Shown: positions 32,918-56,405, counted from the first letter of the stretch. The stretch: DNA of 64,000 nt from Octopus sinensis (GCF_006345805.1 NC_043001.1:50282001-50346000); one strand, 5' to 3'. Numbers and translations: made by a program. The notes: generated by a model from the sequence alone, not told the origin.

Positions 32918-35128
32918 TCATTCTTCAAATACATTAATTGTCTCAATAATTTCACTTAACTGGAATATATCAAAATGAAATTTAGTATTAATTATCGACA
33001 ACAATTTTGGTATCATAGACGTCATCAACAATAATGCAATCTTTGTGGATGTTGATAGGTCCAATTCTTTTTGACTTATTATATTGTTACAAGCAAAGAA
33101 AAAAGATACGATCAGAAAAAATTTTACAATGGATTTACCAATCTCGTATCTCAAAGGATAATGATTGTTAATGATTACTTTGAACAGTTTGGTATTAATG
33201 AATTCCTCTCCATATTTTGACTGAACTAAACTTGGACGAACAATTTTGGTTAGCTTTATAGTTTCAAGTAGGATAAGGTGGTACTGTTTCAGCATAGCAT
33301 TCATAACAGCAGAACCGTAGACGATAAACATGGCAACAAACCATACATCACCAACAGCAAAAGGTTTAGCAAGCATTGCAATAGCTATTGTAAATATATA
33401 ATGACAAATGATTTGAAAACTCAATAGAAATACGTAGCTTGAAAAAAGTACCCATAATGTAAAAAATGGAAACGATATAAACGATAGAATTACAGCAATA
33501 ATCATTGAAGAATAATTATTTTTTACATACAGAGAGAAAATATATACTTTGAAGTAACTTAACGGTAATGTGAAAATCAAATAAACAGTTGGAATTCCGT
33601 AATAAACGAGGCACAGAAGTAGTTCACAGATAGAAAATACAGCAAATAAAATTGTAATCGCAATATAGATCCAAAGTAATATGAATTGGTTAAAAATATT
33701 TCTCTCGTAGTAATAAAACCAAATTTTTTGTAAACGTTTAATCCAAGTACATATTATTAAACGCCAGAAATTTGGATTTAAAGCAGTAGAAATGTTAGCC
33801 TTCATGATTGCATAAAGTAGATCATAATTTTGAAGTGTAGAAACATTTAAATTCCCATAGTTGTTTAATAATTTAATATTTTGAATGAGAAACGTACAAG
33901 TGGATCTTTGATGTAATGTACTATAAGCGACAGTCTCACTTAACCGACTGGGAAGAATGAAGACAATGCAGCTTAAAAATATGTATCCAATAAAAATAAC
34001 TAAGGGACCCCCGAAAAAACCATCTGTATTTTCATAGCTTTCTGAGATTCCTAGTATTAAGGCGCGATAACCCAATGGAATATGATCATATAAAAGTATT
34101 GTCACCGTTTCATATAAAAAAAAATAATGCATTAAAATATCCAAGAAAATAACTGAAAGAGAAAACAGAATAAGAATGAATCTTCTTAATCTTGAAGCAA
34201 AGAACGTGGATTGGTGAAAACAAAATAACCAAGATACAAAATGAGAGAAACTGTAAATGCTATGTTTTTCATTGATCCATTCTGATTTGTAAGGTAAGGT
34301 ATATTTAATTCTAAATAAAAATTCATCGTGAGCGAACTGAACTAGATTGAACTGACGGGAATATGATGGTATTTCAGCTTTTGATGTAAAACGAATAAAC
34401 AATGGGGAAAATGCCCACAACACTGCTCCGACGATATTTGCATAATTAGAAAACGAACTGTTTTCAATATTTCCAGAACAAATGGATTTCCCTTGATAAA
34501 CATAGCTTTCTTTTTTATGTACTTCACAGCAGTATTTCTTCAATATCTTTCGATTCATACCCAATCTTCTGTAAGCTAGAAGCGCATTAGGACTGTTCTT
34601 CTTCAAATCGTGTAACAAACTGATAAAAAAACACATGTATCCAGATTCTCCCATTTGCAATTCATCGGTAAATACAATTCTCTTCAGTCCCTCGAAAATC
34701 AAATGTATTACATCGTTTCTATGAATATTTTGTTTTGCACATTTTATATCGATATTGATGCTTGGAGTAGCGATATAAGCATCTAATAAATTAAGAGAGT
34801 AAACTGAAAAGTCATAGCCGACATTTTTATACGCTTTTAAACCGTCAGGTTTATTTGGAATCCACGAGAAATGCCTAGCATTTGCAAAATAATTCAATGG
34901 TACAGGCTTCAGAAGGCCATCAAGTCTTTTATCAGATATATGGACTTCAAAATTGAAAACCTTTCTGCCTGATTTTAATAAACGAGTTAATATGTTGCTG
35001 ACATTGGGAGAAATTGTAGTTGTACAATTATGTCCGAGTTCTTTCGCATCTACTTTTAGCGATGTCAGTGTGGTAATAAGGGTGATTGAAAGAATAAGAA
35101 GACTGGTTGCTGTTGTTGTTATCTGCAT
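32918..35128 (-). CDS. Paralog 2: ~736-aa signal peptide + Cys-containing ectodomain + ~9-10 TM protein, unknown function
   Basis: Uninterrupted ORF. The likely start is the ATG at 35128 (gccATG, aligns with paralog 3 start, followed by a hydrophobic signal-like stretch), not the ORF-track start at 35176, which lies in a polypyrimidine tract. Colinear with paralog 3 over the full length. Confidence 0.88.
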   Translation of the reverse strand: MQITTTATSLLILSITLITTLTSLKVDAKELGHNCTTTISPNVSNILTRLLKSGRKVFNFEVHISDKRLDGLLKPVPLNYFANARHFSWIPNKPDGLKAYKNVGYDFSVYSLNLLDAYIATPSINIDIKCAKQNIHRNDVIHLIFEGLKRIVFTDELQMGESGYMCFFISLLHDLKKNSPNALLAYRRLGMNRKILKKYCCEVHKKESYVYQGKSICSGNIENSSFSNYANIVGAVLWAFSPLFIRFTSKAEIPSYSRQFNLVQFAHDEFLFRIKYTLPYKSEWINEKHSIYSFSHFVSWLFCFHQSTFFASRLRRFILILFSLSVIFLDILMHYFFLYETVTILLYDHIPLGYRALILGISESYENTDGFFGGPLVIFIGYIFLSCIVFILPSRLSETVAYSTLHQRSTCTFLIQNIKLLNNYGNLNVSTLQNYDLLYAIMKANISTALNPNFWRLIICTWIKRLQKIWFYYYERNIFNQFILLWIYIAITILFAVFSICELLLCLVYYGIPTVYLIFTLPLSYFKVYIFSLYVKNNYSSMIIAVILSFISFPFFTLWVLFSSYVFLLSFQIICHYIFTIAIAMLAKPFAVGDVWFVAMFIVYGSAVMNAMLKQYHLILLETIKLTKIVRPSLVQSKYGEEFINTKLFKVIINNHYPLRYEIGKSIVKFFLIVSFFFACNNIISQKELDLSTSTKIALLLMTSMIPKLLSIINTKFHFDIFQLSEIIETINVFEE

Positions 35129-35146
35129 GGCAGCAATATTAAGTTG

Positions 35147-35165
35147 TCTGTAAATAAAAAAAAAT
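35147..35165 (-). promoter_or_regulatory. Putative splice acceptor upstream of paralog 2 start
   Basis: Minus strand tttttttatttacag|acaac; AG ends 19 nt before the ATG; same motif and spacing in paralog 3. Confidence 0.65.
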
Positions 35166-35339
35166 AGAACATACATAACAACAAGGTTTCATTTCAGTTT
35201 CATTTGAAATGAAGAATATTTCTATAGCCGATTTCTTGGAATTAGAAGGCTTTTTTAAGTAGAAAAAAATCTTTCAAATTGTGGTGATAACTTCGATAAA
35301 GACATATACACAATCCGATGATACTTAACAGCTCCACAT

Positions 35340-37740
35340 GAAATTCATTGACTGACGTCAGCAAAACTGCCATAACTATCGAAAATAAACACAACTCTAT
35401 CAACGTCTTGGACGTTAACCTCAATCTAGAAACAGGGATATATAAACCCTACCATAAACCGAATACCAACCTAAGATACACTAGCATAAATAGTAACCAT
35501 CCAAGAAGCATTACACAAGGACTAGTTGAAGATATATTAAAAAAGATTTTAAATCTCTCGACAAATGAGGACTTTTAAAAAATAGAATATGGACTATTAT
35601 GACATAGTACTAAATAAAGCAGGATACAAGCAAACATTAGAATGCCATGGACCAAAGGATAACTCTAACAATAGGAACTATATCCATGAAGTAAGATACA
35701 AGCAAAAATACTATTAACCAAACGTAAATTCTAATAAGAACTATGCACAAAACGATATTCACAATAATGAAATTAGAATAAAGGAAAATAAACATAAGGA
35801 ATAAATGAATACAGATGGAATTCTATATAAAATAGATGAGAATAATATAAGAATAAACATCAAGAAACAAATAGAAGGTATAAGTGAACCAAAAACAAAT
35901 AACAAGGATAGAAACGCTAAGGAACTAATAAAATTTAAAGATAATAGAAAGAAGGCTAAAAATAAAATATAATAATGAAAATTGTGACTATTTAAGTGAA
36001 AACCTAAATAGGATAAAATAACAAAAGGTAGTAATTGAAAACCTAAACGGTAATATGCATAGCAATTCTGTTAAACATTACACCCCATGTATAAAAGTAA
36101 TTAACTGCAGGAAATTTACTCTAAAAGGAATTACTTTGAAACTAATATACCGTAAATCCTCGAGTATAATCCGCATTATTTTCCCAAAATTTAATGGTCA
36201 AAATCCCTAGTGCGTACTATATACGAGATTTAAAATGAAAGTTATTTTCTAAGCAATGTCCGAGTCTCTATTTGCTGTCCGGCAATGTTTATTTAGACGC
36301 ATTTTGAAATGTCGGGCGCGAAAATACCTTAAGCTAAGTCTGAAAGCAATGAAGTCATAAAAGAATCATTCACAACTTGCAGTAAGCAACATTTATTAAA
36401 CGTTATTACTGTTATTACTGTTATTTCTTTATTTTCTGCAAACAAAATGCACAACAAAGTTACACGTTTGCATTATGTTATACGTACAATAATAATAAAG
36501 GACGTTACCGTATACATTTTTACAAACAAAGGACATTATATAGACCTCCTTGACTCAAGTTAGAGAAGGAGTGCGTATTATACACAAGGCTAAGGTTTTT
36601 CAGAAGTACGGCCCCTAAAAATCCCCTGCGTATTATACTCAAGGGTGGACTATACTCGAGGATTTACAGTAGTATAGTTCATAATACCATTTGCCGAACA
36701 AATTATAACCAATATAGGGAAATTATTTTACAAAGCCGTAGCCAAACATTTTCAAAGGAAAACAAATATCACAAAATAATAAACTCACACAAATTAAGGG
36801 CGAGTTTCTGCGTTTCAAAAAACATTGCACAAATTATGTCTACTCTAAATACTAAAAAATTAAATAATTTCTTCAATAATAGGAGTAAGGAAAATACAAA
36901 TGATTTACTTAACGGCCAGAATTACAAAGACCATAGCGATAGTAAGAAATACACAATAAACGAAGCAAGGGAAATAACCCTTAACATCTCCTCACTAAGA
37001 CCGAAAAATGTAAACTTGCAGCCTACAAAAAGGAGAGTAAAAATGTAATAATAATAACAAAAATTATAATAAAAACATCAATACAAATAATTGAAATATA
37101 TGCGCTGATACTTATAGTAGCAACAACGAGCATAGAATGAGCTACAATATAAATATTAAGATGAATAAGATAAGGAAAGAAGAAGATAATAAGTCTTTAG
37201 CTAAGACTCATAACACAAGAAATAAACATAAAGAAATTAACTCTGAAAACGGGAAAAATAGGCATAACATTAGTAGTAAGGAAACAGTGAAGTTCCTGAA
37301 AATAAAACCATCTGTGATTGTTCCAATAACAACAGATGGCCATTAAAAAATTTTTGTAGTGAAAAATGTATAATATATAGGTGTAAAGTAACGTCGGAGG
37401 GCCAGGGTTACTACTATATAGGTTCCACGGAAAAGTATATAAAAAGTATGATAGCCAACCATAAAAGCACCTTTAGGGATAAGAGGTAAGAATCTAGCAC
37501 TAGTTCAAGTAGATTAATTTGGGAAATTAAGGAAAAATATAAAGAATATACTCTGAAGTGGGAAGTAATTAGCAGGGCAAAATCTTAAAGTATTGGAAGC
37601 GAGAGATGTGACTTTTGCGTTGAGGAAATTTTCCAGATCATTACATCCAAGGACAAATTAAACAACAGCAAAAGAGACAGAGGTTTTTGTTGCTTACATA
37701 GAATTAAATATACGTATAATAAATTCAAATAAATAAAATT
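35340..37740 (+). mobile_element. Degenerate Penelope-like element (RT C-terminus + GIY-YIG)
   Basis: INVLDVNLNLETGIYKPYHKPNTNL...SNHP motif near 35400; IYRCKV..YYYIGSTE..NHKSTF..LKWEVI..CDFCVEE near 37370-37640. Confidence 0.8.
36150..36669. mobile_element. 520-bp pogo/Tigger-like MITE
   Basis: TIRs ccgtaaatcctcgagtata / tatactcgaggatttacag (1 mismatch), TA on both sides; inserted in the Penelope element. Confidence 0.85.
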
Positions 37741-37982
37741 AGATAGACATTATAGGAATAGACATACGTCTAGTAATTCCAAATAAATATAATTAAATCG
37801 ACATTAAGTAAATAAATATCTAGAACTAATAATACTATATTAATCAAATAGAGAATACACGTTGAAACCCTTACTATCAGCTGATGTATCAAAATAAATA
37901 ATTTAACTATTATATTAAATAAATGAGGGATAGAGAACTTGTTATATTCATAAGGGAAAAGAAATATATGTATATATATATA

Positions 37983-38853
37983 TGAGGTCTGATCAATAAG
38001 TATCCGGACTGTTATCATGGTAAAGAATCTAAAGTACACAGAGTAAAGCTGCTTGGTACAGATTGACCATGAACGCTGCTTTGCATGTGCACAAAGTTTT
38101 AACGATCTAGCTCACTTCTGCTGTTGCTTGGAAGGAAGGTATATAGCGTGCGATCGTCGCATTGACCATGACAGAAAAATGTTGAGCAGAGAATCGGCAT
38201 CAAATTTTGCCATAAGCTTGGTGATACCTGCTCAGAGACCTACGCAAAGTTTTCGATAAGTTTTCATCGTTCTCGACACAATCAAGATCTTTTGTAACCA
38301 ACCCGAGTGTCGTATAGGTCAGCTGAAAGCAGTGTTGGCACAAACTTGGCAGACACGCGTTTCATACCCAAATCTTCAGTGACAATGGACCGAATTGAAC
38401 GGTAACTAATCTGCACTAATCACGTAAATAATCACGGATAGTGGTGCGACGATTTCTCCTTACAACTGCAAACACTTTGATGTTTTTTTCAGTTCTGCTG
38501 GTTGCGGGTATCCCAGAATGTTCAATATCGACATCTTTTCGTCCATCTTAGAAACGTCTGAACCACTCGTACACTTGTGTGAGGCTCATACACTTCTCTC
38601 TCTCCGCTTTCTGCAACTTTGCGTAGGCCTCTGAGCAGGTATCGCCATGACAACTTTCTCTGTCACGGTCAATGCGGCGATCGCACACTACACACCTTCC
38701 TTCCATGCACTGCTGTAAACAACGGAATTGAGTTGGAACGTTAAAAAACTTAGTGCACATGCACAGCAGAGTTCAAGGTCAATCTTTGACAAGCGGATTT
38801 ACTTCAGCTTCGTTGCTATGGCAACAGTCCGGATACTTATTGATCAGACCTCG
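37983..38853. mobile_element. Non-autonomous mariner with long inverted arms
   Basis: ~31-bp TIRs (gaggtctgatcaataagtatccggactgtt) with TA flanks; both arms carry transposase 5' sequence. Confidence 0.85.
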
Positions 38854-38897
38854 TACATATAGATATGTAAACATACATACATGCATACATACAAACA

Positions 38898-38969
<72 letters not shown>

Positions 38970-38988
38970 GAATAAGTACTAGACTTAC

Positions 38989-39075
38989 AAAGAATAAGTC
39001 CCGGGGTGGATTTGTTCGACCAAAAGTGGTGCTTCAGCAGGGCCGCAGTCAAATGACTGAAACAAGTAAAAGAAT
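38989..39075 (+). mobile_element. SINE family B 3' fragment
   Basis: agaataagtactagacttacaaagaataagtcccgggg...gtcaaatgactgaaacaagtaaaaga matches the end of the 63593 copy. Confidence 0.75.
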
Positions 39076-39114
39076 AAATGAATATATATATATATTCTTT
39101 GACCCAATTATATA

Positions 39115-39174
<60 letters not shown>

Positions 39175-39589
39175 GTGTGTGTGTGTGTGTGTGTGTGTGT
39201 TGTGTGTGTGTGTGTGTGTGTAATTTGGTCAAACACTAAATGTGCTTGATCCAACAAAATGTTGGGTTGAGCTCAAACGAGACTTGACTCTAGTTGATTC
39301 CGTATTAGAAAAATCGATTTTTTCAATTCCGTAATTTCCATTAACTTTTTCAAATTACGTATACATTATGTTAAAATATTCATTGTATTATAACCTTTAT
39401 TTTCATATAAGTTTTATAGCATAATAATTAATAACTATAATAATAATAAAATATTTTTAGCATTTTGTTGTGTCTGGGGAGAGACATTTTCTTTTTGTGC
39501 CTTATAATTTAACACACTTACCGGTAAAATTTCCACTTGTTTCTTATTTTTGTTTTCCTACTCTCGGTCTCCTTTTTTCAGATATCAGT

Positions 39590-40015
39590 CTTTCGCAACT
39601 AGCAAAATCCTCTGGAATTTCCCAATCTAAACAGATCAGGTGCTAGAGTATAACAGACTAGTGATGGTAGAGAAGGTGTAACACATACGCTATATAGTTG
39701 ATGTTGCATGCCGATTTGATCCACGAATAGTCGAGAAGGAAGGCGAAAACATAGAGAGATACAACCCCCTAAGTACGAAATAGCTCCGCTATGGAAAATG
39801 AAGTGGAATACAGTGCTAATTATTGTTGGGGCTTTGGGAACAGCATCAGAAGGCATCAAAGGGAATATAAAGAACTGTTACAAAAGGTTTTCCTTGACAC
39901 GGCCAGAATAATCAGGAAATTATTAGATAGTTGAAAAGAATGGATAGCGTGGTACCGTAGGCTGCAGGTAGAAAGCCCGCTAAGAATGCAAGACACCAGG
40001 AGCGCCAACAAACCT
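39590..40015 (+). mobile_element. Degenerate R4-like 3' fragment
   Basis: EIAPLWKMKWNTVLIIVGALGT and LQKVFLDTARIIRKLL-like pieces. Confidence 0.6.
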
Positions 40016-40044
40016 GTTATATATCACGATTCCGTACTGCTACT

Positions 40045-40455
40045 TTATTCTTTTATTTGTTTCAGTCATTTAACTGCGGCCATGCTGGAGCATCGCTTTT
40101 AGTCGAACAGATCAACCCCAGGACTTATTCTTTGTAAGCCTACTACTTATTCTATTGGTCTCTTTTGCCGAACCACTAAGTTAGGAGGACGCAAACACAC
40201 CGACATCGGTTGTCAAGCGATGGTGATGGGGACAAACACAGAACACAAACACACACACACGCACATATATACACACATATATGTGTATACGACGGGCTTC
40301 TTTCAGTTTCCGTCTACCAAATCCACTCACATGGCTTTGCTCGGTCCGAGGCTACAGTAGAAGACACTTGCCCAAGGTGCCACGCAATGGGACTGAACTC
40401 AGAACCATATGGCTGGTAAGCAAGCTACTTACCACATAGCCACTCTTCCGCCTAT
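40045..40455 (-). mobile_element. SINE family B, diverged
   Basis: Similar to 27612-28017. Confidence 0.8.
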
Positions 40456-40699
40456 GTTCACATCTCGCTCAGAGATTTAATATAGCTTATTTCTCAGTGC
40501 ATAAGTTGAAGGCGAAGGAATGACGCAAAGGACCTTTGGCAATTTGATGTAGCTCGTTCTTTTGGTATAGTTTCAGGATAACATCTGTCAGACAGAAAGC
40601 ATCAATGAAAATAATAACAATAATGATAATTTCTTTTATTGACCAAAAGGGTCCAAGACATGGAGGACAGAGAATAGAACCGCTAGTCCTTGTAAACAA

Positions 40700-41000
40700 T
40701 GAAGTGAGCTTGTGAGACTTTTCTATAAAAAATTGAAAGAACAGAACAGAACCGAACCGAACACGATATCTTAGTCTTTGAAGAAACTAGGCATTGTAAT
40801 TAACGCTATATGCACATCTAACACGGAATTTTGAAAATATAGAATGTTACACCAACCTGAAGTGTGATATCCTAGAGTACTGCAGACAGATTATTATGAT
40901 ACCGGCGGTTTTTATTGGAGCCTTGGTAATAGTAACAAATACCTGGAATAAAGATGAAAAAACTAGATATTTTAACCTAAAAATGAGTGAAATGCAAAAA
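40700..41000 (+). mobile_element. Degenerate R4-like 3' fragment
   Basis: LWDFSI-like, RTEHDI-like and IIMIPAVFIGALG-like pieces. Confidence 0.4.
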
Positions 41001-41450
41001 ATGTCTTTTGGGTGTAGTAAAATTTTCTCATTGGAAATTAGTAATTGATAGCAAGAGCAGGTAATTTTTTATGCGGCTACCTTCCCTCTAAAGATTTAAT
41101 CTGCGTTTGTATTTCAGACGTTACGATGGTGTGCGCGCGTGCGTGTGTGTGAGTGTGTGCGTGTATGCTTCTATGTGTATGTGTGTGTGTATTTATTGCT
41201 GTTGATATGGTTGATGAGTAGCTCTACAAAAGATCTACTCGTCATCATCATCATAAACACAACAACAGCAACAACAATAAAATAAATAAAACAGTAACAC
41301 AAATGGGTACTCTGGCAAATAAGTTGAAAGAGGGAAGAAGGGAGGGAAGAAACAGTTTTTCATAAACGACAACATTTAGACGAAAATTTATATCCAGTAG
41401 AGAGTGAGAAGGATAGAGAGATGAATATATGGATGGATAAACAGTTTGAG

Positions 41451-41529
<79 letters not shown>

Positions 41530-41530
41530 G

Positions 41531-41920
41531 CGTGAGACAAATAGAAATAGGGTGATAGAATTAATGCATTCGAGCTTTGGTGTTGGAGAAGACTTTTGTG
41601 GATTCCATGGACAGCGAGGTTCACCAATGGAGAAGTTCTTAAGCAGATAAGGCCGAAAATGTCGCTAGAAGCTGGGATCACCAAGCGTAGATTGGCATAT
41701 TTCGGTCATATTATGCGGAGAAAATCCCCGGAGAAGGACATCATGCTCGGAATGGTCAGTGGCAATGGAGGAAGAGGCAGACCAAGAACCCGCTGGCTTG
41801 ACACCATCAGGAGTGATACCGGAATGAACATGGCCAGTCTGAAGGAAGCGGCCCAGGATAGAACTGACTGGAGGACACTGATCCAACGAGTGACCGAGAG
41901 TCGACTTCGACTGAGCGGAT
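41531..41920 (+). mobile_element. RTE/BovB-like LINE 3' fragment
   Basis: IPWTARFTNGEVL...RLAYFGHIMRR..EKDIMLG...RGRPRTRWLD...AQDRTDWR. Confidence 0.85.
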
Positions 41921-41959
41921 ATATATATATATATAAATATATATATATATATGATAAAG

Positions 41960-42435
41960 GCTAATGGGCCCGGTTTCCCAGTTTCAATGTCGTATGTGTT
42001 CCCCAGCTGGATGGGACGCCAGTCCATCGCAGCGTTACTCATTTTTGCCAGCTGAGTGGACTGGAACAGCGTGAAATGAAGTGTTTTGCTCAAAAACACA
42101 ACGCGTCGCCCGATCCAGGAATCGAAACCACAATCTTACGATCATGATGCTGACACCCTAACCACTAAGCCACGAGCCTCCACTAAATGTTCCTTCTCGA
42201 GCCATGCCAGGTTCATACGGGCCGGTTTCCTGGTTTCATTGGCGTAGAAATTCCTCACCTGGACGGGACGCCGGTCCGTCGCAGGATTACTCATTTTTGC
42301 CAGCTGAGTGGACTGGAGCAACGTAAAATGAAATGTTTTACTCAAGAACACAACGCATCGCCCGGTCCAGGAATCGAAACCACAACCTTACGATCATGAG
42401 TTCAACACTCTAACCACTAAGCCGCGCGCCTCCAT
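41960..42435 (-). mobile_element. Two tandem copies of tRNA-derived SINE family C
   Basis: Heads ggaggctcgtggcttagtggttaggg and ggaggcgcgcggcttagtggttagag with ggtttcgattcc B-box; shared body caaaacacttcatttcacg. Confidence 0.85.
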
Positions 42436-44462: not shown

Positions 44463-44474
44463 TATGTGTGTGTG

Positions 44475-44536
<62 letters not shown>

Positions 44537-44670
44537 ATAAAAACTTAAAAACTTACTTGGAGAAATAAGAAAGTGACGCGACATATGGGCTTCTATCACC
44601 CTATTTCTATGTATGTATGTATGTATGTATGTATGTATGTATGTATGTATGTATGTATGTATGTATCTAT

Positions 44671-44754
<84 letters not shown>

Positions 44755-45830: not shown

Positions 45831-45853
45831 TGCGTTCAACTCCATTTATTTAC

Positions 45854-45905
<52 letters not shown>

Positions 45906-47039: not shown

Positions 47040-49000
47040 TCAACTCTTAACCACTTTAGGCTAAGTTCCCAACAAAATGTAAATGGGAAAATATTGCTTG
47101 TCGTTGTTGTTAGACGGGCTATGGTATTTTTGGTAGATAATGGCTATATTGATTGTGCAGTACAGAAAGCTGGAATCCTAGGTATACTAGGTTGCATAGA
47201 TCTGGGATACTGTGCAGACAGCGAAGAGACTGTAAAGCAACCTAGCATTTGTGTGACTTAATCTGGCAACCGATTTTGGATCAGTTCCACACAAACTGCT
47301 TGAGCATGACATGGAGCTGTTCTGGGTTTCACCAGAAGTCTGCAAATTAAAGATAGACTACTAAGGCAAGTTCTACATGCGATTTACCACAAAGGACTAT
47401 TCAACGACTTGGAAGAAACGAGGCAGAGTGGCCCACGACCATGGAAGGAAAGACCTACTTCTATAAAAAAAAGTTTTCAAGGATGATGTAGCTTTGTTAT
47501 CTTGAAGGAGAAGTCAGTGGCGAGAATCCCGAGAAGACTGGATGAGCTGAGAAGCTGAACAAGTCATTCTTGTTCAGCTTATCAGCTCATCCAGTATTCT
47601 CGGGATTTTAAAGCTCATTACTTTAAAACAAAGTTACGGAGTGCAACATTCATGAAGGAGAGACAGAAATAAGTGAAGGATGAGATTGCAGGAAAACTCA
47701 TGCTTACAATAACAGCGGAGCCTGTGGAGATCCTGAGGAGACATTATTGTGGACCGCTTAATGATAGGGGTTAAGGTATCCGAAATCCAGAAAATTACTG
47801 TGAATTATCGATAAAACATTGCTACCAAATAAGTTCAAACTCTGGTATTTGCAATTTGCTCTGTACCCCAGACTGCAGTGGTTACTGGTATTCTATCAAG
47901 TTGCACTGACACAGGATGCTACAACAAAACGAAACGTAACGTCTATATTTGCAAGTGGGCCTTTGCGAGCCCACTTGGAAATATGGGCTCTTGCAAGCAT
48001 GTATTTGTAAAGGAATAAAAGGAAATTAGAGACACACATTTCATCAATAGTTGAGCAGTACAAATGTGATAAGGTGCGGACGGTACTGATGCTGCACCAT
48101 TCAAATGACTTTGTCATCCAATCCTTTCTTCTAGAGAGAGATAAGAACTGGAAAAAAGTGGATAGCTTCGGATGCAACGGAGAAGTTTGTGGGCTCCTTA
48201 AAGTATAGGGATATAATGATCCACACACAGACAAATAGAGAAGGCCTCGAAAATCATACTATGAATGAGAAGCAGAGAAGGATTGCACTAGCCAACCAGG
48301 TAAAGAAAGAACAGTCAAAAAGCAGTTGCATGGAGTTGGTACAATGTAACCAACAGGAATAGTGTGTACCGCTTGGGCGAAAGGTAAGATGGAAAAGAAC
48401 TTTGGTCATGGGAACCAGCCAGAATCAGTTATCTGATTCGCCCTGTGTTCTGCATTCTTCCTAGTACTGCAAACTTGCGTTGGAAAATAAAAGTGGTCTG
48501 TGTAAATTTGGACAGATCGGAACGATGAATCGCTAACACTCCAACTGTCCACTAGAGCTGGAGCACAGTTGTACATGACGGCATGACTAAGCATTTAGAT
48601 TACTGGCTGACGAAGTATCGGAGGTGGGTAATGTGAATTAACAACGATGAAGACCAAAAGTAGAGAAGTATAGGAAGACAAAATGTTGAAGGGAAGGTGA
48701 ACGTTGCAAGTCAGCTACTGTAAGGAAGAAGAATGATCCCAAATGGAAGGATACTTGAAAGGTCTCTGTAGATTTTGTTGGTATATATCCCTTTCCACCT
48801 TTTGCCATCAACGAAATGAAAGTGGAAAAAATGTAGAACAGATAATTCTTTGAGAAGTGAACATTGAATACACTTTCCTTAGGAAAGACAGAAAATAAGT
48901 AAGTTAGTTGAACTCTGAGAAAACGAACTATTGGCGGCAATTTGTCTTCTGTAGACTTAGGTGTTAGAGGATTTGTTTCACTTGATACTCAAAAATCTTG
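47040..49000 (+). mobile_element. Degenerate HERO/NeSL-type retrotransposon
   Basis: LPNKFKLWYLQFALYPRLQWLLVFYQVAL, WEPARISYLIRPVFCILPSTANL and YT*RHD pieces; same clade as 1570-2190. Confidence 0.7.
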
Positions 49001-49399
49001 GATTATTCGCGAAGTAAAGAAAAGATGTCAGAAAATCGTCAGAAACCACTAAGAAAGCAAGTTTGGTTTAAGACCGAGGAGGAGTGGTGCAGTAAGAACG
49101 AGCAATGAGGACGATAGAAACATCTGGCCCAGATCCGTAATGTCTGATTCAACAAAGCACGTAGTGTTGTACGGGAGTTTTATCGCTTAAATCGGTGGGT
49201 GGACCTGAGCAAGTATGATTTCGCGATAAAAGAGACGAAAACACCTACGAAGCTACTTCACCGCCTGATGAGAAATATACTTCTGTTTTTGGAGACAGAG
49301 TACAGCAGCACTTGAAATCCATGTAATGCTCTTTTCTTTTTCTTTTTCCGTTCTTTTTCTTTTATTTGATGTCAAATAGACATAACACATCAACCGCAA

Positions 49400-51560
49400 T
49401 ACATCGTTTCTTTAGGTAAGTCTCATTACAACCTCATCCCATCCTTTCCAATTACGTATTTCTATTTTCTCATATTTCTGTTTCCCTAAAATAGTCATTT
49501 CTCTTTGCATGCAAAACCAAATCTCTTTCAAATATCTCAGTGGATGACTGCTGCAATCTTATAATGATTACCTTTTTTGAATTCTTTCTAAACCAACTGT
49601 AGATATTCCGATACAATATTAATTAAGATTTCATCTGGATCATCACACATTCTATATTTGTATGAGTATTCCTCTTAATCTCTCATTCTCGAGATCTAAA
49701 TATTCCTTTGGGTATATACCTACTCAATTGAAACCATACTCACGGTATCTTTCTTGAATACTTCTTTCTTTAACCTCATTAACCAGAGCCTGCTGTCTTT
49801 GTCTATTTGGATTTTTTGAATAATCATTGAACGAAGTCTCTTTGTTTTAAATTTTGTTTTCTCATTTTCTATATATTCCCGTTTTCCTTTTTCAGATTCT
49901 ACCTGCTTACTAGAACTTCTTTTCCTTCTTGATAGAAACCTTGACTTGTTTTCTCTAACTCTCTTTCTGTAACCGCTGCGCATCTGACTGGGGATGCCTG
50001 TTTCTGTACATTGTGAAATACTTATTCATTTTCTTGTTGATATCATACCTTTCTTCAACTCAATAGTTTTTACTCCATAATTTATTTGCAATACTGCGGG
50101 CATCTTTACTGCGGGCATCTTTCAATTTATATTTCTCATTTTATCAGTTTCCAATATTCTCACATATATGTATGTTATTTCAACATTTAGTCATTTTATA
50201 TTCTCCTCATTAGATAGATCTATTCCAGTATTTTTGTGAATTTTACCTACTTCATCTCCATCATAGAAAATGTTCGATTCAAATGCCAACCTAATGTCAC
50301 TTACTGTTTGCTCTAAGAAATCCTGTTGGATCTTGTTGCCATAAAGCTTTCAATCAACTTTAGATACTTGAATTACATTTCCGCTTTACTTTCCAGAGTG
50401 TCCTTCCTTAGCTTTGTTTAGATTTGCTTAATTTTTCTGCAACAAGTTTGTTCAATAGTCATTGCTTTTTATAGTGATGTTGGAATACCTATGTGTTTCT
50501 ACATAATTGGTATACATCTAATTGGCCGGTAATTTGAAACAGCGTTTACTTTGAATTTGTCTTTCAGTACTAGACAGGTTCTTCTTTTTGTTAGTCATAC
50601 TTTGATAAGTTCTTATTTAGTTGTATTGCAAAGTGTCATGGAAACTGACAAAATCTTTACGCCACTATCCAGAGATAAGAACGGAGCTGGCAGTTTCTCC
50701 ACCTTTCTGCTGGTTCTAATTACTTTCGAATATTAGCCTATATCATTTTTACTGTGCTTGAGCATTTTCATCGTAATTTTTCACTTGCTTTATCCACTTT
50801 TCTTCATCGTTGTGTTTAGCATTTCCCCCTATATTTCTCTCTCAAATAACTTTCTTCAACATTTGGTACTACTTTATTATGCTTCTTATCTCTTTCAATG
50901 ATATCCAATACACGTTTCAAGACTGTAAAACGCAATTATGCTCATACTGTTTGGTTCTTCCTTTATACTCCATAACTTTGGCAGCTTTTGACTCTACTCT
51001 CTGCTTTTGTTGTCTTATTTCCATTTTCTCTTACCTCTAATCTACCCTTCTCCTCTGTCTTTAATTTATCTGAATTCCACCGTCGATTGAGATCTTTATA
51101 TTTTTCCTAATATCTCAAAATTATTAGTATCCAAGTTTGTCACAAAGGTTTCTACAAAGGTTTCCACTAAAGTTCTTTTGTCTGTCCTTTCTTTTTCCAC
51201 TAGATTTCCTCAAATAAATTAACACCTGCTAATACTTATGTATCGGTATCTTTATTATTTCTGTAGATAATCTTATCAATACCATTGTTCAATTTTAATG
51301 TTATTTCAATATTGGTTCGATCTACTAATCACAAATTTTCTGACTCCAGGGCCTCAGTTTCCTTCAGTTTCTTCCTCAGTTTTTATGGATCTCCAGTTGA
51401 TCGTTAAGCATTTCCACATCAAATTCCCTTTCCTCTAGCATCCACCTTCTTGGCGAGCGTTGTATTCTCCTGGTTAGCTACAATATTTACGTTCTACTAA
51501 TTCATCCATTTGGGTTTGATTTGTTGGTTCTTGTGAATTCTTTAGTGATTTTACTCTGTC
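49400..51560 (-). mobile_element. Highly degenerate R4/Dong-like element
   Basis: YRMCDDPDEILINIVSE..KEFKK resembles CRMC-ETI-HIVSGC-KEYK; other RT-like remnants. Confidence 0.5.
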
Positions 51561-52129
51561 TTTTTTACAATTTTAAGCGAGGAAGAAGTTTTTCATTCTT
51601 GAAGCACAATACTTAGCATACTATTCTTCAAGCCTCAACATGGTGATGACTGAATCTAAGCCGTTTTACTGCAGAGCATCTACAGGACCAAAAACTTTCT
51701 CCAGAAGCTGCAATTTCATTCATGCGATTTAAAAAAAAATTTTAATTCTATATAATGCATTCACAAAGAGATAGCGATTTTAAGTTTATTATATTATTCG
51801 TGTTGTTTTTGTTTCGAGCCAAAATCGCCGAGAAGGTTGGCAACCATGGCTAAAATGTTCCTTCTCCCTTTGAAATAGATTTTACCCCGTTTATGATCAG
51901 CGGTTCATTGGGACACCATTTCAGACATGTTATCCGGAAGACAAGTCTACTTGTCGACTTTTAGCTGAGGCTGGTTGTAACTGCGTTGGTTGCCGTAACG
52001 GTACTTAATCCCTCTCAGATCAGAAGAATTCTCGACCATGGTCCAGTAATACAGTTAGTAGACCTTGTGTGACTGCTTTGAACATGTTAGTCACCTGAAA
52101 TACATTATTTTGTACAAGAAAATATAGAT

Positions 52130-52530
52130 ATAGGCGCAGACGTGGCTGACTGGTAAGAAGCTTGCTTCCCAACCACATGGTTCCGGGTTCTGTTCCACTG
52201 CTAGGCACCTTGGGCAAGTGTCTTCTACTATAGCCTGGAGCCGATCAAAGCTTTGTGAATGGATTTGGCTGACGGAAACTGAAAGAAGCCTGTCCTATAT
52301 ATTTATGCGTATGTTTGTGTGTGTTTGTGTTTGCCCCCTACCACCACCACCATCGCTTGACAACCAATGTTGGTGTGTTTACGTCCCTGTCACTTAGTGG
52401 TTTAGCAAAAGAGACCGATAGAATAAGTACTAGGCTTACAAAGAATAAATCTGGGGTCGATGTTTTCAACTAAAGGCGGTGCCCCGGCATGGCCGCAGTC
52501 AAATGACTGAAACAAGTAAATGAATAAAAG
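52130..52530 (+). mobile_element. SINE family B
   Basis: aggcgcagacgtggctgactggtaagaagcttgc...gcaccttgggcaagtgtcttctactatagcc...gtcaaatgactgaaacaagt. Confidence 0.85.
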
Positions 52531-53520
52531 AATTGAATTCGATGAGCCGTTGAATCCTTTAAGTTCATTCATCCACTGAAAGGTCTTATTTTTCTTTTTT
52601 CCTGCACGGGGTTCAAATGTAGGAACAAATTTACAATATCACCCTTCTCACCCAGCAACTTCGGTGGACTTGTCAATGTCCTCGCCAACAGCTCAATCAT
52701 TATCTTTTTGCTTCTAAAAAGATTTAAATAGGTAATGCAATTCACCCCTTTTAGTTAAAAACTAAAACTGCAGCCAACACAAAATATAACCTGATTATGA
52801 CACATAAACCCCTATAAACCACATAAACCTATAAAAGTTTGCTCTGCTACATTCGTGCTTGAGTGAAGTGAAACAATAGCAAACTTTATTTATTCAGCCA
52901 TAAGAAACTACCCCCATCATCCCTTTCTTTCGACCCACACTCAACAAACATATTTTCCTCCTGTCCTTCTTCATCCCCGCTTCCTATAGTCATTTCTCTT
53001 GTCTCGGTACGTTGTACTTAATTTCCATTTACTGCATGCCACCTACCAAAGAAACACTCTGCCACAAGCTATACATAAATGTAGAAAGATCATAGTAAAC
53101 CATACTCTGATAGCACCGAAGCTTTGAAGTCACTGTCAATTATTTTGTTGAAAATATTAATGCATTCGTACGCACGCACACACATACACACACATTCTCA
53201 AAATACCTTGCCTTACAGTTCAACTTTTGTTCAACCATGTCATATACTACTGCAATTGTTGCCACACTACATTATACTGATACTACATAATGAAACTAAC
53301 CACAACTGCGAATACAGTTCCTACAAAATGGTAATCATAGCAATGCTTTTCTTCATAACATACAAGAATGGTCAGTCGATAGCCACTCCTTTTCCTTCTT
53401 TTATTTGAAAAGTGGAAATTACTCCCTAAAATTTACAGGATCATTAAAAAATGTATGCAAGAAACTGCTATGCTCTTTCTGTTTTTAATTCTTAAAATAT
53501 CACCATGCATAAAGACAACG

Positions 53521-53735
53521 GACTGACAGAATCGTTAGCACGCCGGACAAAATGCTTAGTGGCATTTCATCCGTCTTCACGTGCTGAATTCAAATTCTGC
53601 TGCTGTCGACCTTGCTTTTCACCCTCTCGGAGTTGATATAATAAGTACCAACTGAACACTGGAGTTGATTTAAACAACTTACTTCCCTTCCTCCAAGCTT
53701 GCTGGACTTCTACCAAAATTTGAAACCAATATTAC
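53521..53735 (+). mobile_element. Diverged SINE family A
   Basis: gacagaatcgttagcacgccggacaaaatgcttag...gaattcaaattctgc. Confidence 0.7.
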
Positions 53736-54161
53736 CTTTCATATCTTGCTTAAATCCTCACCTGCATTTCTTGAAAGTTCTTTCTTTCAGGCATATATCT
53801 CATTTAAGCATATTGCACTGTTTTAAGTAAATTACAATAATCCTTTATGCACACACACACACACACACACCACACACACACACACACACACCACACACAC
53901 ACACACACACACATGCAAACACACACACACACACTCGCACGCAAACACACAGACACATACTACACACATTCACGCGCACACATATTCATATACGTATTAT
54001 TATGTACATACAGTCACACACATATACATACACACACACACATCTATAATGAGTGTGGGTCTGTGTGTTTTGTTTGATATTTTGTGCTTTCAGTGTGAAA
54101 GTAGTTAAAAACGATAGAATAATTTCTAGCATATATGAATAGTTTTATTTTTCAGAGAATA

Positions 54162-56405
54162 TTAACAAAGTGATAAACTTGTCTGTGAAATATTTACTTC
54201 TTCGAATATATTAATTGTTTTGATAATTCTATGTGACAGGGATAAATCAACACGAAATTTAGTATTAATTATTGACAATAATTTAGGTATCAGAGACGTC
54301 GTCAAAATCAACGTGATTTTTGTGAATGCTGATAAATCTAAATCATTTCGGTTTATTATGTTGTTGCAAGCAAAGAAAAAAGATACGATTAGGAACAGTT
54401 TTACAATGGATGTACTAATTTCGTATCTCAAAGGAAAATGTTCGTTAATAATTGTTTTAAACAATTTTGCACTTATGAATTTCTCTCCATATTTTGATTG
54501 AACTAATTCTGAGCGAACAGTTCTGGTTAACTTTATACTTTTAACTAGTATAGTGCGATACTTTTTATGAATAGCTTTCGTAACTGCAAAACCGTAAACG
54601 AAAAACATGGCGACAAACCATATATCACCAATAGTATCAGGTTTAGCAATTACAGCAATAGCTATTGAAAATGAATAGTTGCAAAGAACTTGGAAAGTTG
54701 TAAGAAAAATAAAAATCGAATCTAAATACCATAATACATAAAAGGGCAACGAAGCGAATGTTAAAATAAAAGCAGTGATCTTTAAAATTTGGTTGGGATT
54801 CAAATACATTGGTAAAATATAGACTTTGAAGTAACTTAAGGGTAAAGTTAGCATCAAATAAACGATTGGGATTCCGTAATAAACGAGGCACAGAAGTAAT
54901 TCGCAGATAGAAAATACAGCAAATAAAATCGTGATCGTAATAAATAACCAAAGAAATATGAATTGGCTAAAAATATTTCTCTCGTAGTAATAAAACCAAA
55001 TTTTCTTTATACGTTTAATCCAAGTATAAATAATTAAATACCAGAAATTTGGGTTTAAAGCAGTAGAAATATTGGCTTTCATTATTGCATAAAGTAGATC
55101 GTAATCTTCAAGTTCAAACCTATTTAAATTTCCATAGTTCTCTATTAATCTAATATTTTGAATAAGAAAAGTGCAAGTAGACCTTTGATGTAATGTACTA
55201 TAAGCGATAGTCTCACTTAAACGACTGGGAAAAACGAAGAGAATAAAGTTGAAAAATATATAGCTAATTATCCAAAAAAAGGGACCCCCGAAAAAACCAT
55301 CTGTATTTTCATAGCTTTCTGAGATTCCTAGAATCATGCCACGATAACCCAATGGAATACGATCATGTAAAAGTATTTTCATCGTTTCATATAAAAATAA
55401 ATAATGCATTAAAAGATCCAGGAAAATTATTGAAAGAGGAAACATAATAAAAATGAATCTTCTTAATTTTGAAGCAAAGAAAGTGGAATGGTGAAAACAA
55501 AATAACCAAGATAGAAAATGAGAGAAAGTGTAAATATTATGTTTTTCATTGATCCATTCTAATTTGTGTGGCAATGTGTACATAATTCTAAATGAGGATT
55601 CACCGTGAGCTAGTTGCTGTTGGTTAAGTTCGCGGGAATATGAAGGTAATTTAGCTTTTGATACAAACCTGATAATTAATGGCAATATAGCCCACAAAAC
55701 TGCTCCAACAATATTTTCATAATTGACATACATGCTATTGTCAATGGTATGTCCAGAACAAATGTATTGTGAATCATAAACATGGCTTTTATTTTTATGT
55801 AGCTCACAGCAATAGTTCTTCAATATCTCTCGATTCATACCCAGTCTTCTATAAGCTTCTAACGCGTATTTGTTCGTCTTATTCATGTCCTGGGATAAAT
55901 TTATAAGAAAACACATGTATCCGGAATCTCCCATTTGCAATTTATCGATAAATATGGCTCTCTTCAATTCCTTGAAAATTAAATTTATCACACCGAATCT
56001 CTGAATATTTTGTTTTCCACAATTTATATCGATATCAACACTTAGAGTAGCGATGTAGACATCTAATAAATTAAATGTGTGAAGTGAAAAGTCATAGAAG
56101 AAATTCTTATACGCTATGAGACCATCTTTTTCATCTGGAATCCACGTGAAACGCCGAGCATCTGCATAAAGATCTAATGGTACAGGATTCAGAAAACCAT
56201 CAAGATTTTTATCAGATATATGAACTTCAAAAATGAAAACCTTTTTGCCTGATTTTACTAAACGATTTAAACTCTTGCTGACATTGGGGCAAATTTTTAT
56301 TTCACAATTATTTCCGAGTTCTGTTGTATCTATATTTAGTGGTGTCAGTAATATAATAAATGTGATTGAAACAATAAGAGAATTGGTTGCTATTGTCATC
56401 TTCAT
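54162..56405 (-). CDS. Paralog 3: 747-aa signal peptide + Cys-containing ectodomain + ~9-10 TM protein, unknown function
   Basis: Uninterrupted 747-aa ORF in AT-rich DNA; gccATG start; signal-like N-terminus; ~200-aa region with 7 Cys and N-glycosylation sequons (NVS, NLS, NKT, NKS), then multiple hydrophobic segments; synonymous-biased differences from paralog 2. Confidence 0.9.
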   Translation of the reverse strand: MKMTIATNSLIVSITFIILLTPLNIDTTELGNNCEIKICPNVSKSLNRLVKSGKKVFIFEVHISDKNLDGFLNPVPLDLYADARRFTWIPDEKDGLIAYKNFFYDFSLHTFNLLDVYIATLSVDIDINCGKQNIQRFGVINLIFKELKRAIFIDKLQMGDSGYMCFLINLSQDMNKTNKYALEAYRRLGMNREILKNYCCELHKNKSHVYDSQYICSGHTIDNSMYVNYENIVGAVLWAILPLIIRFVSKAKLPSYSRELNQQQLAHGESSFRIMYTLPHKLEWINEKHNIYTFSHFLSWLFCFHHSTFFASKLRRFIFIMFPLSIIFLDLLMHYLFLYETMKILLHDRIPLGYRGMILGISESYENTDGFFGGPFFWIISYIFFNFILFVFPSRLSETIAYSTLHQRSTCTFLIQNIRLIENYGNLNRFELEDYDLLYAIMKANISTALNPNFWYLIIYTWIKRIKKIWFYYYERNIFSQFIFLWLFITITILFAVFSICELLLCLVYYGIPIVYLMLTLPLSYFKVYILPMYLNPNQILKITAFILTFASLPFYVLWYLDSIFIFLTTFQVLCNYSFSIAIAVIAKPDTIGDIWFVAMFFVYGFAVTKAIHKKYRTILVKSIKLTRTVRSELVQSKYGEKFISAKLFKTIINEHFPLRYEISTSIVKLFLIVSFFFACNNIINRNDLDLSAFTKITLILTTSLIPKLLSIINTKFRVDLSLSHRIIKTINIFEEVNISQTSLSLC

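What the first reader, a model, noticed from the sequence alone, without database searches (positions are those of the whole stretch)
32918..56405. Cluster of three paralogous genes for an unrecognised signal-peptide + Cys-ectodomain + ~10-TM protein family
Seen: three long intact ORFs (1..1407 +, 32918..35128 -, 54162..56405 -) in DNA where nearly everything else is decayed. The complete copies have a signal-like N-terminus, a ~200-aa ectodomain with 6 Cys shared by paralogs 2 and 3 (GxNC, xxC, YMC, YCC, xIC), one TM, a loop, and about 8-9 further hydrophobic segments with invariant motifs (IPLGYR, ICELLLxLVYYGIP, AKPxxxGxxWFVAMF, IVSFFFACNNII). Established: this does not fit Cys-loop receptors (4 TM) or 7-TM GPCRs. 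Inference: tandem, single-coding-exon, ectodomain-bearing paralogs are typical of sensory or immune receptor expansions, so this may be an undescribed receptor, channel or transporter family. From memory (unverified), the ectodomain motif W...YDFxxxSLxLL...C...YCC...C resembles an uncharacterised multi-TM family expanded in corals and other invertebrates.
Basis: partly seen in the sequence, partly recalled or inferred. Interest (0 to 1): 0.85.

Follow-up and report, generated by a model that had tools for sequence, protein, structure and literature searches.

The report
Uncharacterised mollusc membrane glycoprotein gene cluster
Three neighbouring octopus genes encode intact, selectively maintained members of a mollusc-wide family of surface membrane proteins; no function, characterised relative or matching solved fold could be found, and the database label "retinol receptor STRA6" failed every test run here.

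Summary
The window (Octopus sinensis/vulgaris) holds three paralogous single-coding-exon genes: c1 at 1-1407 (+), cut by the window start; c2 at 32918-35128 (-); c3 at 54162-56405 (-). Stop-free runs of 468, 756 and 769 codons compare with a maximum of 200 in simulated windows. The encoded protein has a signal peptide, a ~195-aa glycosylated ectodomain with six conserved Cys, and about nine TM helices.

The genes are under purifying selection: ortholog dN/dS is 0.49 and paralog dN/dS is 0.42-0.59.

The family is not cephalopod-specific. 213 clusters at 50% identity were found. All named members are molluscs (octopods, bivalves, Haliotis), plus a weak hit in the annelid Owenia. No coral member was seen.

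A sister mollusc family carrying Pfam PF28478 is homologous over its full length (hhalign 99.5%).

UniRef labels a few members "Receptor for retinol uptake STRA6". That label failed every test here:
- Pfam RBP_receptor gave no hit, with a working positive control.
- hhalign against STRA6 gave 0.4% probability.
- A confident AlphaFold model (pLDDT 86.9, pTM 0.84) had no Foldseek match in PDB or BFVD (best E about 1).

Best reading: an uncharacterised surface receptor with a transporter- or channel-like membrane module of unknown fold, expanded in tandem in octopods. The function is inferred, not shown.

The parts
1..1407 (+). c1: C-terminal 468 codons plus stop of paralog 1. The gene begins upstream of the window. 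The window starts inside the repeat-rich TM1-TM2 loop.
   Evidence: The frame is open from base 1. It is 57% identical to c2 and c3. O. sinensis P0018 is 98.8% identical over the aligned 161 residues (its C-terminal part); P0016 (841 aa, 89-94% identical) shows the missing N-terminal ectodomain and a tandem-repeat linker.
32918..35128 (-). c2: complete coding exon of paralog 2 (736 aa plus stop).
   Evidence: ORF. It is 90% identical to O. bimaculoides A0A0L8GRC4 (P0003). dN/dS against c3 is 0.42.
35129..35160 (-). c2 5' end of the coding exon: 19-nt leader preceded by a polypyrimidine tract and an AG acceptor (AG at 35149-35148).
   Evidence: Sequence tttttatttacag|acaacttaatattgctgccATG. It has the same layout as c3.
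54162..56405 (-). c3: complete coding exon of paralog 3 (747 aa plus stop). Signal peptide about 1-28, ectodomain about 29-223, TM helices between 224 and 714, C-terminal helix 721-746.
   Evidence: ORF. The exact protein is encoded in O. sinensis CM016863.1. It is 91% identical to O. bimaculoides LOC106875165, with ortholog dN/dS 0.49. AlphaFold model pLDDT 86.9, pTM 0.84.
56406..56440 (-). c3 5' leader (19 nt) and splice acceptor (AG at 56426-56425). This implies an upstream non-coding exon.
   Evidence: Sequence ttctttttatttacag|acaacgaagtacggcagccATG. The O. vulgaris gene model P0017 splices in at this point.

Best explanation
The three ORFs are functional paralogous genes of a mollusc-wide (probably lophotrochozoan) family of polytopic membrane glycoproteins that has no characterised relative.

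Architecture: a cleavable signal peptide; a ~195-aa alpha/beta ectodomain with about four N-glycosylation sequons and six conserved Cys (three likely disulfides); then, directly after it, about nine TM helices with the N-terminus outside and the C-terminus inside. There is a disordered, repeat-tolerant cytoplasmic TM1-TM2 loop, a structured positively charged cytoplasmic helical region between TM3 and TM4, and a C-terminal cytoplasmic helix.

Most likely mode of action (inferred): a cell-surface receptor. The faster-evolving ectodomain binds an extracellular ligand. The more conserved membrane module then moves an ion or small molecule across or into the membrane, or relays the binding event. 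That module has one nearly invariant intramembrane Glu (E502 in ICELLL), R465, Y604, Y616 and helix-breaking Pro/Gly hinges.

The octopod lineage expanded the family in tandem to at least 6-9 copies.

Shown: gene integrity, purifying selection, family distribution, domain architecture, a confident model, and absence of detectable similarity to any characterised family or solved structure. Inferred: plasma-membrane location, ligand binding, and transport or channel activity.
For: Intact genes:
- ORFs of 736 and 747 codons against a simulated maximum of 200.
- Ortholog dN/dS is 0.49, from 36 synonymous and 70 non-synonymous changes, with dS 0.082 similar to flank divergence of 8-13%.
- Paralog dN/dS is 0.42-0.59. 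The ectodomain (0.64) evolves faster than the TM part (0.34).

Family:
- 213 clusters at 50% identity have E<=1e-3 and 125 have E<=1e-30. Most are full length.
- Named members are Octopus, Argonauta, Mytilus, Sinanodonta, Potamilus, Mercenaria, Ruditapes, Dreissena, Haliotis and Owenia.
- Several Mercenaria loci (LOCs) lie on one chromosome.
- The single coding exon is also seen in Mercenaria and in an unnamed assembly from ENA (European Nucleotide Archive).
- Octopod copies form one clade, with ortholog pairs c1/P0010, c2/P0003 and c3/P0001.

Architecture:
- Hydropathy.
- Family-wide, the ectodomain averages 4.1 sequons and 6.8 Cys, and loop 3-4 has a net charge of +5.5.
- Conserved residues.
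- AlphaFold pLDDT 86.9, pTM 0.84.

No known relative:
- Pfam gives nothing.
- PDB sequence and profile searches give nothing.
- Foldseek against PDB has a best E of 1.1 and against BFVD a best E of 0.96.
Against: - No expression, localisation or functional data were obtainable, so the receptor/transporter reading rests on architecture and evolutionary pattern only.
- dN/dS of about 0.5 is relaxed.
- The protein could reside in the ER or Golgi, with the 'ectodomain' luminal.
- No AlphaFold DB or other library of cellular predicted structures was available, so a fold match to an uncharacterised or unsolved family cannot be excluded.
- Foldseek is less sensitive for all-helical membrane domains.
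- UniRef's STRA6 label on three members implies some automated signature hit that I could not reproduce or inspect.
Confidence: 0.5

Rival explanations
1. Very remote STRA6-superfamily member. On this reading it is a receptor that docks an extracellular lipocalin-type carrier and passes a lipophilic cargo (retinoid or other) into the membrane. The mollusc-specific Cys-rich ectodomain would replace the short STRA6 N-terminus.
For: - UniRef names P0001, P0003 (the orthologs of c3 and c2) and Elysia P0219 of the sister family 'Receptor for retinol uptake STRA6'.
- A nine-TM topology with N-terminus out and C-terminus in is compatible with the model and with STRA6 (PMC8595884, PMC12953553).
Against: - Pfam RBP_receptor PF14752 is not hit by any of 52 members even at E<=10. 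The control STRA6 sequences hit it at 3.4e-271.
- hhalign of the 101-sequence profile against zebrafish plus human STRA6 gives probability 0.4%. The sister family gives 0.5% and the sub-domains 0.1-0.2%.
- Profile hmmsearch against PDB, which includes 5SY1, finds nothing.
- Foldseek with a confident model does not list 5sy1 among the 50 matches shown, of 78 with E<=10.
- Helix spacing differs: there are 60-aa and 88-aa loops after TM1 and TM3, and turns of 1-3 residues between TM4 and TM7.
- Only 2 of 6 O. bimaculoides paralogs carry the label, which suggests a borderline automated hit.
- STRA6 is reported absent from the annelid Platynereis (PMC5821490).
Confidence: 0.12
2. Intracellular (ER, Golgi or lysosomal) polytopic enzyme or housekeeping transporter. 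The N-terminal domain would be luminal and catalytic or substrate-binding, not a surface receptor.
For: - A signal peptide plus a glycosylated, disulfide-bonded domain is equally compatible with a luminal location.
- The nearly invariant E502, R465 and Tyr residues and the many conserved prolines could mark a catalytic or transport site.
- The family is old and present across molluscs.
Against: - Lineage-specific tandem expansions, intronless coding sequences, dN/dS of about 0.5 and a faster-evolving ectodomain are unusual for housekeeping enzymes or transporters.
- There is no match to any glycosyl- or acyltransferase or transporter family by Pfam, PDB or Foldseek.
- No internal repeat typical of many transporters was detected.
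Confidence: 0.2
3. Decaying or non-functional ORFs: retrogene relics, transposon or virus-derived genes, or chance ORFs.
For: - The intronless coding sequences sit in repeat-rich DNA with LINE reverse-transcriptase remnants.
- dN/dS is only moderately below 1.
- c1 carries a ~15-aa deletion in loop 3-4 and sits on a long branch.
Against: - The ORFs are 3.7 times longer than any simulated one.
- Orthologs are intact in O. bimaculoides, with non-synonymous changes depleted.
- Conserved splice acceptors lie upstream of the ATG.
- There are more than 200 family clusters across molluscs.
- There are no TE or viral Pfam domains and no BFVD fold match.
Confidence: 0.03

Closest known systems
Sister mollusc family carrying Pfam PF28478 (about 950-1030 aa; Haliotis, Littorina, Patella, Elysia, Mercenaria, Ruditapes; all 'uncharacterized')
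   Same: It is homologous over ectodomain plus TM body: hhalign probability 99.5%, E 6.7e-23, 645 aligned columns. The shared features include the Y-x-CC ectodomain motif and the YYG-x-P / FY-x-P TM motif.
   Different: - It is about 200-280 aa longer, with large insertions in cytoplasmic loops.
- E502 is not conserved in the alignment.
- Members of the octopus family do not carry the precomputed PF28478 hit.
- PF28478 is not in the local Pfam copy, so its name and description could not be read.
- It is itself functionally uncharacterised.
STRA6 / RBP_receptor (PF14752; PDB 5SY1)
   Same: It is a polytopic plasma-membrane protein with nine TM helices, an extracellular N-terminus and a cytoplasmic C-terminal helical tail. 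UniRef applies the STRA6 name to three members.
   Different: - There is no sequence, profile or fold similarity in any test.
- STRA6 has no signal peptide or Cys-rich ectodomain.
- The spacing of its helices is different.
- Calmodulin binding and RBP4 binding are untestable here.
Ectodomain-bearing multi-pass receptor expansions in general (for example octopus chemotactile Cys-loop receptors and invertebrate chemoreceptor families)
   Same: They share tandem, few-exon, lineage-specific paralog clusters and an ectodomain that evolves faster than the membrane part.
   Different: There is no homology. The family shows no Neur_chan or 7tm Pfam match, has about 9 TM helices rather than 4 or 7, and has no expression evidence for sensory tissue.

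Membership tests
STRA6 / RBP_receptor (PF14752) | Significant match to the Pfam RBP_receptor model | tested here: not met
   There were 0 hits at E<=1 to 10 for 27 members of this family and 25 of the sister family. Positive control: zebrafish and human STRA6 hit PF14752 at E 3.4e-271.
STRA6 / RBP_receptor (PF14752) | Profile-level sequence similarity to bona fide STRA6 | tested here: not met
   hhalign of A2 (101 sequences) against STRA6 (2 sequences) gives probability 0.4%. A3 gives 0.5% and the sub-domains 0.1-0.2%. hmmsearch of the A1, A2 and A3 profiles against PDB, which includes 5sy1, gives no hit. Caveat: the STRA6 profile had only two sequences.
STRA6 / RBP_receptor (PF14752) | Fold of 5SY1 | tested here: not met
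   Foldseek of the pLDDT 86.9 model against PDB gives no match with E<=1e-3 and a best E of 1.1. 5sy1 is not among the 50 matches shown (of 78 with E<=10). No pairwise TM-align could be run.
STRA6 / RBP_receptor (PF14752) | Nine TM helices, N-terminus outside, C-terminus inside | tested here: inconclusive
   Nine membrane-length helices fit if helix 539-587 is one long TM. Loop charges and sequon density favour N-out/C-in. A ten-TM reading is not excluded.
STRA6 / RBP_receptor (PF14752) | Calmodulin-bound dimer; binding of holo-RBP4 between TM6 and TM7 | not testable with these tools
   These features are taken from PMC8595884 and PMC12953553. Testing them needs biochemistry or multimer modelling.
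PF28478-bearing mollusc family | Match to the PF28478 model | tested here: not met
   The precomputed Pfam column is '-' for all octopus-family members, while all but one sister-family member carry PF28478.1. The two families are nevertheless homologous. The model itself is absent from the local Pfam copy.
Cys-loop ligand-gated channels | Neur_chan_LBD and Neur_chan_memb domains; 4 TM | tested here: not met
   There are no Pfam hits. There are 9-10 TM segments.
7-TM GPCRs | 7tm Pfam family match; seven TM helices | tested here: not met
   There are no Pfam hits. There are 9-10 TM segments. Foldseek against PDB listed no GPCR among the matches shown; the BFVD search listed only a swinepox GPCR at E 5.8.
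Transposon- or virus-encoded proteins | TE or viral domain, or fold match | tested here: not met
   There are no Pfam TE domains in the three ORFs. The neighbouring RT ORFs are separate. The best BFVD Foldseek E is 0.96.

The most novel reading that the evidence does not exclude
A lophotrochozoan-specific class of cell-surface receptor with a previously unseen fold. In this reading a disulfide-bonded ligand-binding ectodomain is fused to a nine-helix membrane module that conducts ions or transfers a small molecule. It was independently amplified in tandem in octopods, in the cephalopod lineage of P0020-P0023, and in bivalves, as an environment-facing (chemosensory or immune) repertoire.
Probability: 0.3. 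Interest if true: 0.8.

Novelty: categorically new. Interest (0 to 1): 0.55.

Why it matters
If the family is a surface receptor with a transport or channel module of a new fold, it would add a new class to the short list of animal receptor architectures. It would also give molluscs, and octopus in particular, a lineage-expanded repertoire to test for chemosensation, immunity or nutrient uptake.

The work also corrects a propagating annotation. The 'STRA6 retinol receptor' name on octopus and sea-slug proteins is unsupported. This matters for claims about retinoid transport in lophotrochozoans, which are otherwise reported to lack STRA6.

The confident AlphaFold model and the conserved E502, R465, Y604 and Y616 residues give immediate targets for mutagenesis.

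The family's existence is not new, since its members are in RefSeq and UniProt as uncharacterised proteins. What is new is the definition of the family, its range, its architecture and its lack of any known relative.

Tried and rejected
- First AlphaFold run with the shallow 17-sequence alignment gave pLDDT 55 and pTM 0.33. Its Foldseek hits (fucosyltransferase, thioredoxin-like, TRP channels, E>=1.1) were discarded as meaningless.
- The search for homologous proteins with the 101-sequence alignment returned essentially the same octopus set plus one bridge protein, P0196.
The second model was then lost on the server. The job was re-run and gave an identical result.
- STRA6 hypothesis: I recalled the human STRA6 sequence from memory and verified it as STRA6 by its hit to 5sy1_A at E 2.6e-169. 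I took the zebrafish sequence from that output and tested it with hhalign under several settings. All results were negative.
- Internal duplication of the TM body was tested by hhalign of the N half against the C half. None was found.
- Expression evidence: the Logan (assemblies of public SRA sequencing runs) contig L003 (2.8 kb, run SRR24189505) carrying homolog P0020 has no poly(A) tail and no clear splice signature. Whether it is a transcript or genomic DNA is undecided.
- A literature search for six LOC identifiers gave 0 papers. Searches for STRA6 with octopus, mollusc or oyster gave nothing on this family. PTHR21444 gave 0 papers. Chen et al. 2016 (PMC5114850) is not held.
- Rfam on the window gave 0 hits.
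- The exact c2 protein is not on record in the assembly collection, in either the 736-aa or the 752-aa form.
- The coral resemblance was rejected for lack of any cnidarian among the named members. However, only about 30 of 213 clusters could be named.


Full report
OBSERVATION

The window is octopus DNA. The c3 protein is encoded exactly in the Octopus sinensis assembly GCA_006345805.1 (CM016863.1). An O. vulgaris gene model also contains a 100% identical stretch of c3.

- c2: 32918-35128 (-), 736 aa.
- c3: 54162-56405 (-), 747 aa.
- c1: on the + strand, its frame is open from base 1 to the stop at 1405-1407. It is therefore the C-terminal 468 codons of a gene that begins outside the window.

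Stop-free runs of 468, 756 and 769 codons compare with a mean of 140 and a maximum of 200 in 100 first-order Markov simulations of the window. The remaining long ORFs are reverse-transcriptase remnants (RVT_1, zf-RVT). tblastn finds no additional copies or fragments.

c2 and c3 share the sequence tttttatttacag|acaac 19 nt upstream of the ATG. This is a splice acceptor. It implies one non-coding 5' exon and a single coding exon, and it shows that the 752-aa ORF version of c2 is an artefact of translating the polypyrimidine tract.

The six ectodomain Cys are 82-100% conserved across 101 family members.

ARE THE GENES MAINTAINED?

Orthologs: c3 against its O. bimaculoides ortholog (L001) gives dN 0.040, dS 0.082 and dN/dS 0.49. 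That rests on 36 synonymous and 70 non-synonymous changes, whereas roughly 1:3.6 would be expected under neutrality. dS is similar to the 8-13% divergence of the flanking non-coding DNA.

Paralogs: dN/dS is 0.42 for c2-c3 and 0.58-0.59 for c1 against the others. Within c2-c3 the ectodomain (0.64) evolves faster than the membrane part (0.34).

Selection is therefore purifying but relaxed.

A neighbour-joining tree puts all octopod copies in one clade, with Argonauta basal. It pairs c1 with P0010, c2 with P0003 and c3 with P0001. The three-gene cluster thus predates the split between O. bimaculoides and O. vulgaris/sinensis.

RefSeq and UniProt list at least nine loci in O. sinensis and six in O. 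bimaculoides. These lie on at least two chromosomes.

THE FAMILY

A profile search of 1.84 billion representatives found 213 clusters at 50% identity with E<=1e-3, and 125 with E<=1e-30. Most are full length, at 730-880 aa.

Every named member among 30 sampled clusters is lophotrochozoan:
- bivalves: Mytilus, Sinanodonta, Potamilus, Mercenaria, Ruditapes and Dreissena;
- a gastropod: Haliotis;
- an annelid: Owenia, as a weak hit.

All are called 'uncharacterized' or 'hypothetical'.

Several Mercenaria loci (LOCs) lie on one chromosome. The coding sequence is a single exon in O. sinensis, in Mercenaria and in an unnamed assembly from ENA (European Nucleotide Archive).

A weak bridge protein (P0196) led to a sister family of about 950-1030 aa in gastropods and bivalves, nearly all carrying the precomputed Pfam hit PF28478.1. 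The two families are homologous over ectodomain and membrane body: hhalign probability 99.5%, E 6.7e-23, 645 aligned columns. PF28478 is newer than the local Pfam copy, so I could not read its description.

ARCHITECTURE

Hydropathy gives a signal peptide and about ten hydrophobic segments.

With the 101-sequence alignment AlphaFold2 gives a confident model, reproduced in a second run: pLDDT 86.9, pTM 0.84. Its elements are:
- an alpha/beta ectodomain (residues about 29-223);
- TM1 (224-249);
- a low-confidence loop (250-308);
- TM2 (309-337);
- short helices including IPLGYR and the GGP motif;
- TM3 (375-391);
- a helical region (396-474) containing NPNFW and R465;
- tightly connected helices 480-511, 513-535, 539-587 and 589-630;
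- a beta-hairpin (635-645);
- helices 659-686 and 693-714;
- a C-terminal helix (721-746).

Family-wide, the ectodomain averages 4.1 N-glycosylation sequons and 6.8 Cys. The start of TM2 and loop 3-4 are positively charged, with loop 3-4 at net +5.5. The 613-658 segment has sequon density typical of the cytoplasmic loops. This favours nine TM helices with the N-terminus outside and the C-terminus inside, provided that helix 539-587 is one long TM.

The TM1-TM2 loop is poorly conserved. It tolerates tandem repeats in the c1 lineage (P0016) and in P0010.

The conserved polar residues within helices are R313, R316, R465, E502, Y604 and Y616. E502 is the only conserved acidic residue in the membrane helices, at 94%. 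Nearly invariant prolines are P242, P375, P513, P589 and P707. No internal sequence repeat is detectable.

COMPARISON WITH KNOWN FAMILIES

No Pfam family is hit at E<=1 to 10 by 27 members of this family or by 25 of the sister family. This excludes Cys-loop, 7-TM and transposon domains at that sensitivity. phmmer and profile hmmsearch against all PDB sequences find nothing.

UniRef names P0001, P0003 and Elysia P0219 'Receptor for retinol uptake STRA6', so I tested that specifically.
- I recalled the human STRA6 sequence from memory. It was validated by a hit to 5sy1_A at E 2.6e-169, and that output supplied the zebrafish sequence.
- Both sequences hit Pfam RBP_receptor at about 1e-271, so the library control works.
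- hhalign of the family profiles against STRA6 gives 0.4% and 0.5% probability, and 0.1-0.2% for sub-domains.
- Foldseek of the confident model against 350,542 PDB chains gives no match with E<=1e-3. The best E is 1.1, TM-scores normalised to the query are at most 0.10, and 5sy1 is not among the 50 matches shown (of 78 with E<=10).
- The BFVD viral library also gives nothing; its best E is 0.96.

Only two of six O. bimaculoides paralogs carry the STRA6 name, which looks like a borderline automated signature hit. Published surveys report stra6 absent from the annelid Platynereis (PMC5821490) and only Stra6-like genes in amphioxus (PMC3184775).

The STRA6 label is therefore not supported. Three caveats apply:
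- the STRA6 profile had only two sequences;
- Foldseek is weaker on all-helical membrane folds;
- no AlphaFold DB search was possible.

I keep about 12% for a very remote relationship.

MECHANISM

Shown: intact, selected, tandemly duplicated genes for a secretory-pathway polytopic glycoprotein with a confident but unmatched fold.

Inferred:
- the ectodomain faces the outside (or a lumen) and binds something;
- the conserved nine-helix body, with a buried Glu and helix-breaking prolines, carries out transport, conduction or signal relay.

The receptor reading rests on three evolutionary features:
- lineage-specific tandem expansions in octopods, in the cephalopod lineage of P0020-P0023 and in bivalves;
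- intronless coding sequences;
- dN/dS of about 0.5, with a faster-evolving ectodomain.

This pattern resembles environment-facing receptor repertoires more than housekeeping enzymes, which is why I rank the surface-receptor reading first. An intracellular enzyme or transporter role (about 20%) and a remote STRA6-like lipophilic-cargo receptor (about 12%) remain open. Pseudogene or transposon explanations are effectively excluded.

VERDICT

The interpretation as an undescribed receptor, channel or transporter family is reasonable but only partly supported.

The family is mollusc-wide rather than cephalopod-specific. It is already present in databases as uncharacterised proteins, is mislabelled STRA6 in a few entries, and has a sister family with a recent Pfam entry.

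By every test available here it has no characterised relative and no solved structural analogue. I therefore rate it as a new kind in function and fold, not in existence, with moderate interest (0.55), pending expression data and a search of predicted-structure libraries.

Noticed in passing
window 54471-56426 and 40490-40585 (-); locus L001 1-7460: The O. vulgaris gene model P0017 ('cytoplasmic-like', 1010 aa) is a chimera. It joins a gelsolin protein to the ectodomain and a piece of the TM region of c3, plus a 32-aa terminal exon at 40490-40585. In O. bimaculoides a separate gelsolin gene ends about 2.5 kb upstream of the c3 ortholog on the same strand. The fusion therefore looks like a read-through annotation artefact.
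   Followed up: partly
window 1-60 (+); proteins P0016, P0010: The c1 lineage has a tandem-repeat expansion in the TM1-TM2 loop, with about 24-aa units such as SLEPNHQQSTNEEVHLEILPSSPN in O. sinensis P0016. The window begins in the last unit. c1 also lacks about 15 residues of the otherwise conserved TFLIQ...YGNL segment of loop 3-4 and sits on a long branch.
   Followed up: partly
window 8426-10700 (-), 14394-17507 (+), 20416-23200 (+): There are non-LTR retrotransposon remnants. One is a 552-aa ORF with an RVT_1 domain followed by a zf-RVT ORF. Two more fragmented RT copies lie on the + strand.
   Followed up: partly
window 7302-7688, 29466-29675, 41970-42434: There are long microsatellites, (ATAG)x97 and (GT)x107, and a 252-bp unit present in 1.8 tandem copies. 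Several (AAT)n arrays lie at 13194, 16287, 18085 and 26981. The repeat-derived 'ORFs' at 7144-8279 and 29218-29751 are artefacts of these.
   Followed up: no
proteins P0001, P0003, P0219 (UniRef names): The automated name 'Receptor for retinol uptake STRA6' is attached to only some paralogs of this family and to one member of the sister family. No test here reproduces any similarity to STRA6, so the name is probably a propagating mis-annotation.
   Followed up: yes
proteins P0016, P0018, P0019 (O. sinensis and O. vulgaris models of c1-like genes): These gene models skip internal TM segments: TM4-TM7 are missing in P0016 and most of the TM body is missing in P0019. The window's c1 ORF is continuous through these regions, so the predicted introns inside the single coding exon look like annotation errors.
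   Followed up: no
locus L006 14719-20148 (-), Mercenaria mercenaria: A Sulfotransfer_2 gene lies next to one Mercenaria family member. A Tc3-type DDE transposase lies near the member from the unnamed ENA assembly (L004 22232-22931). No conserved neighbour is shared with the octopus cluster.
   Followed up: no
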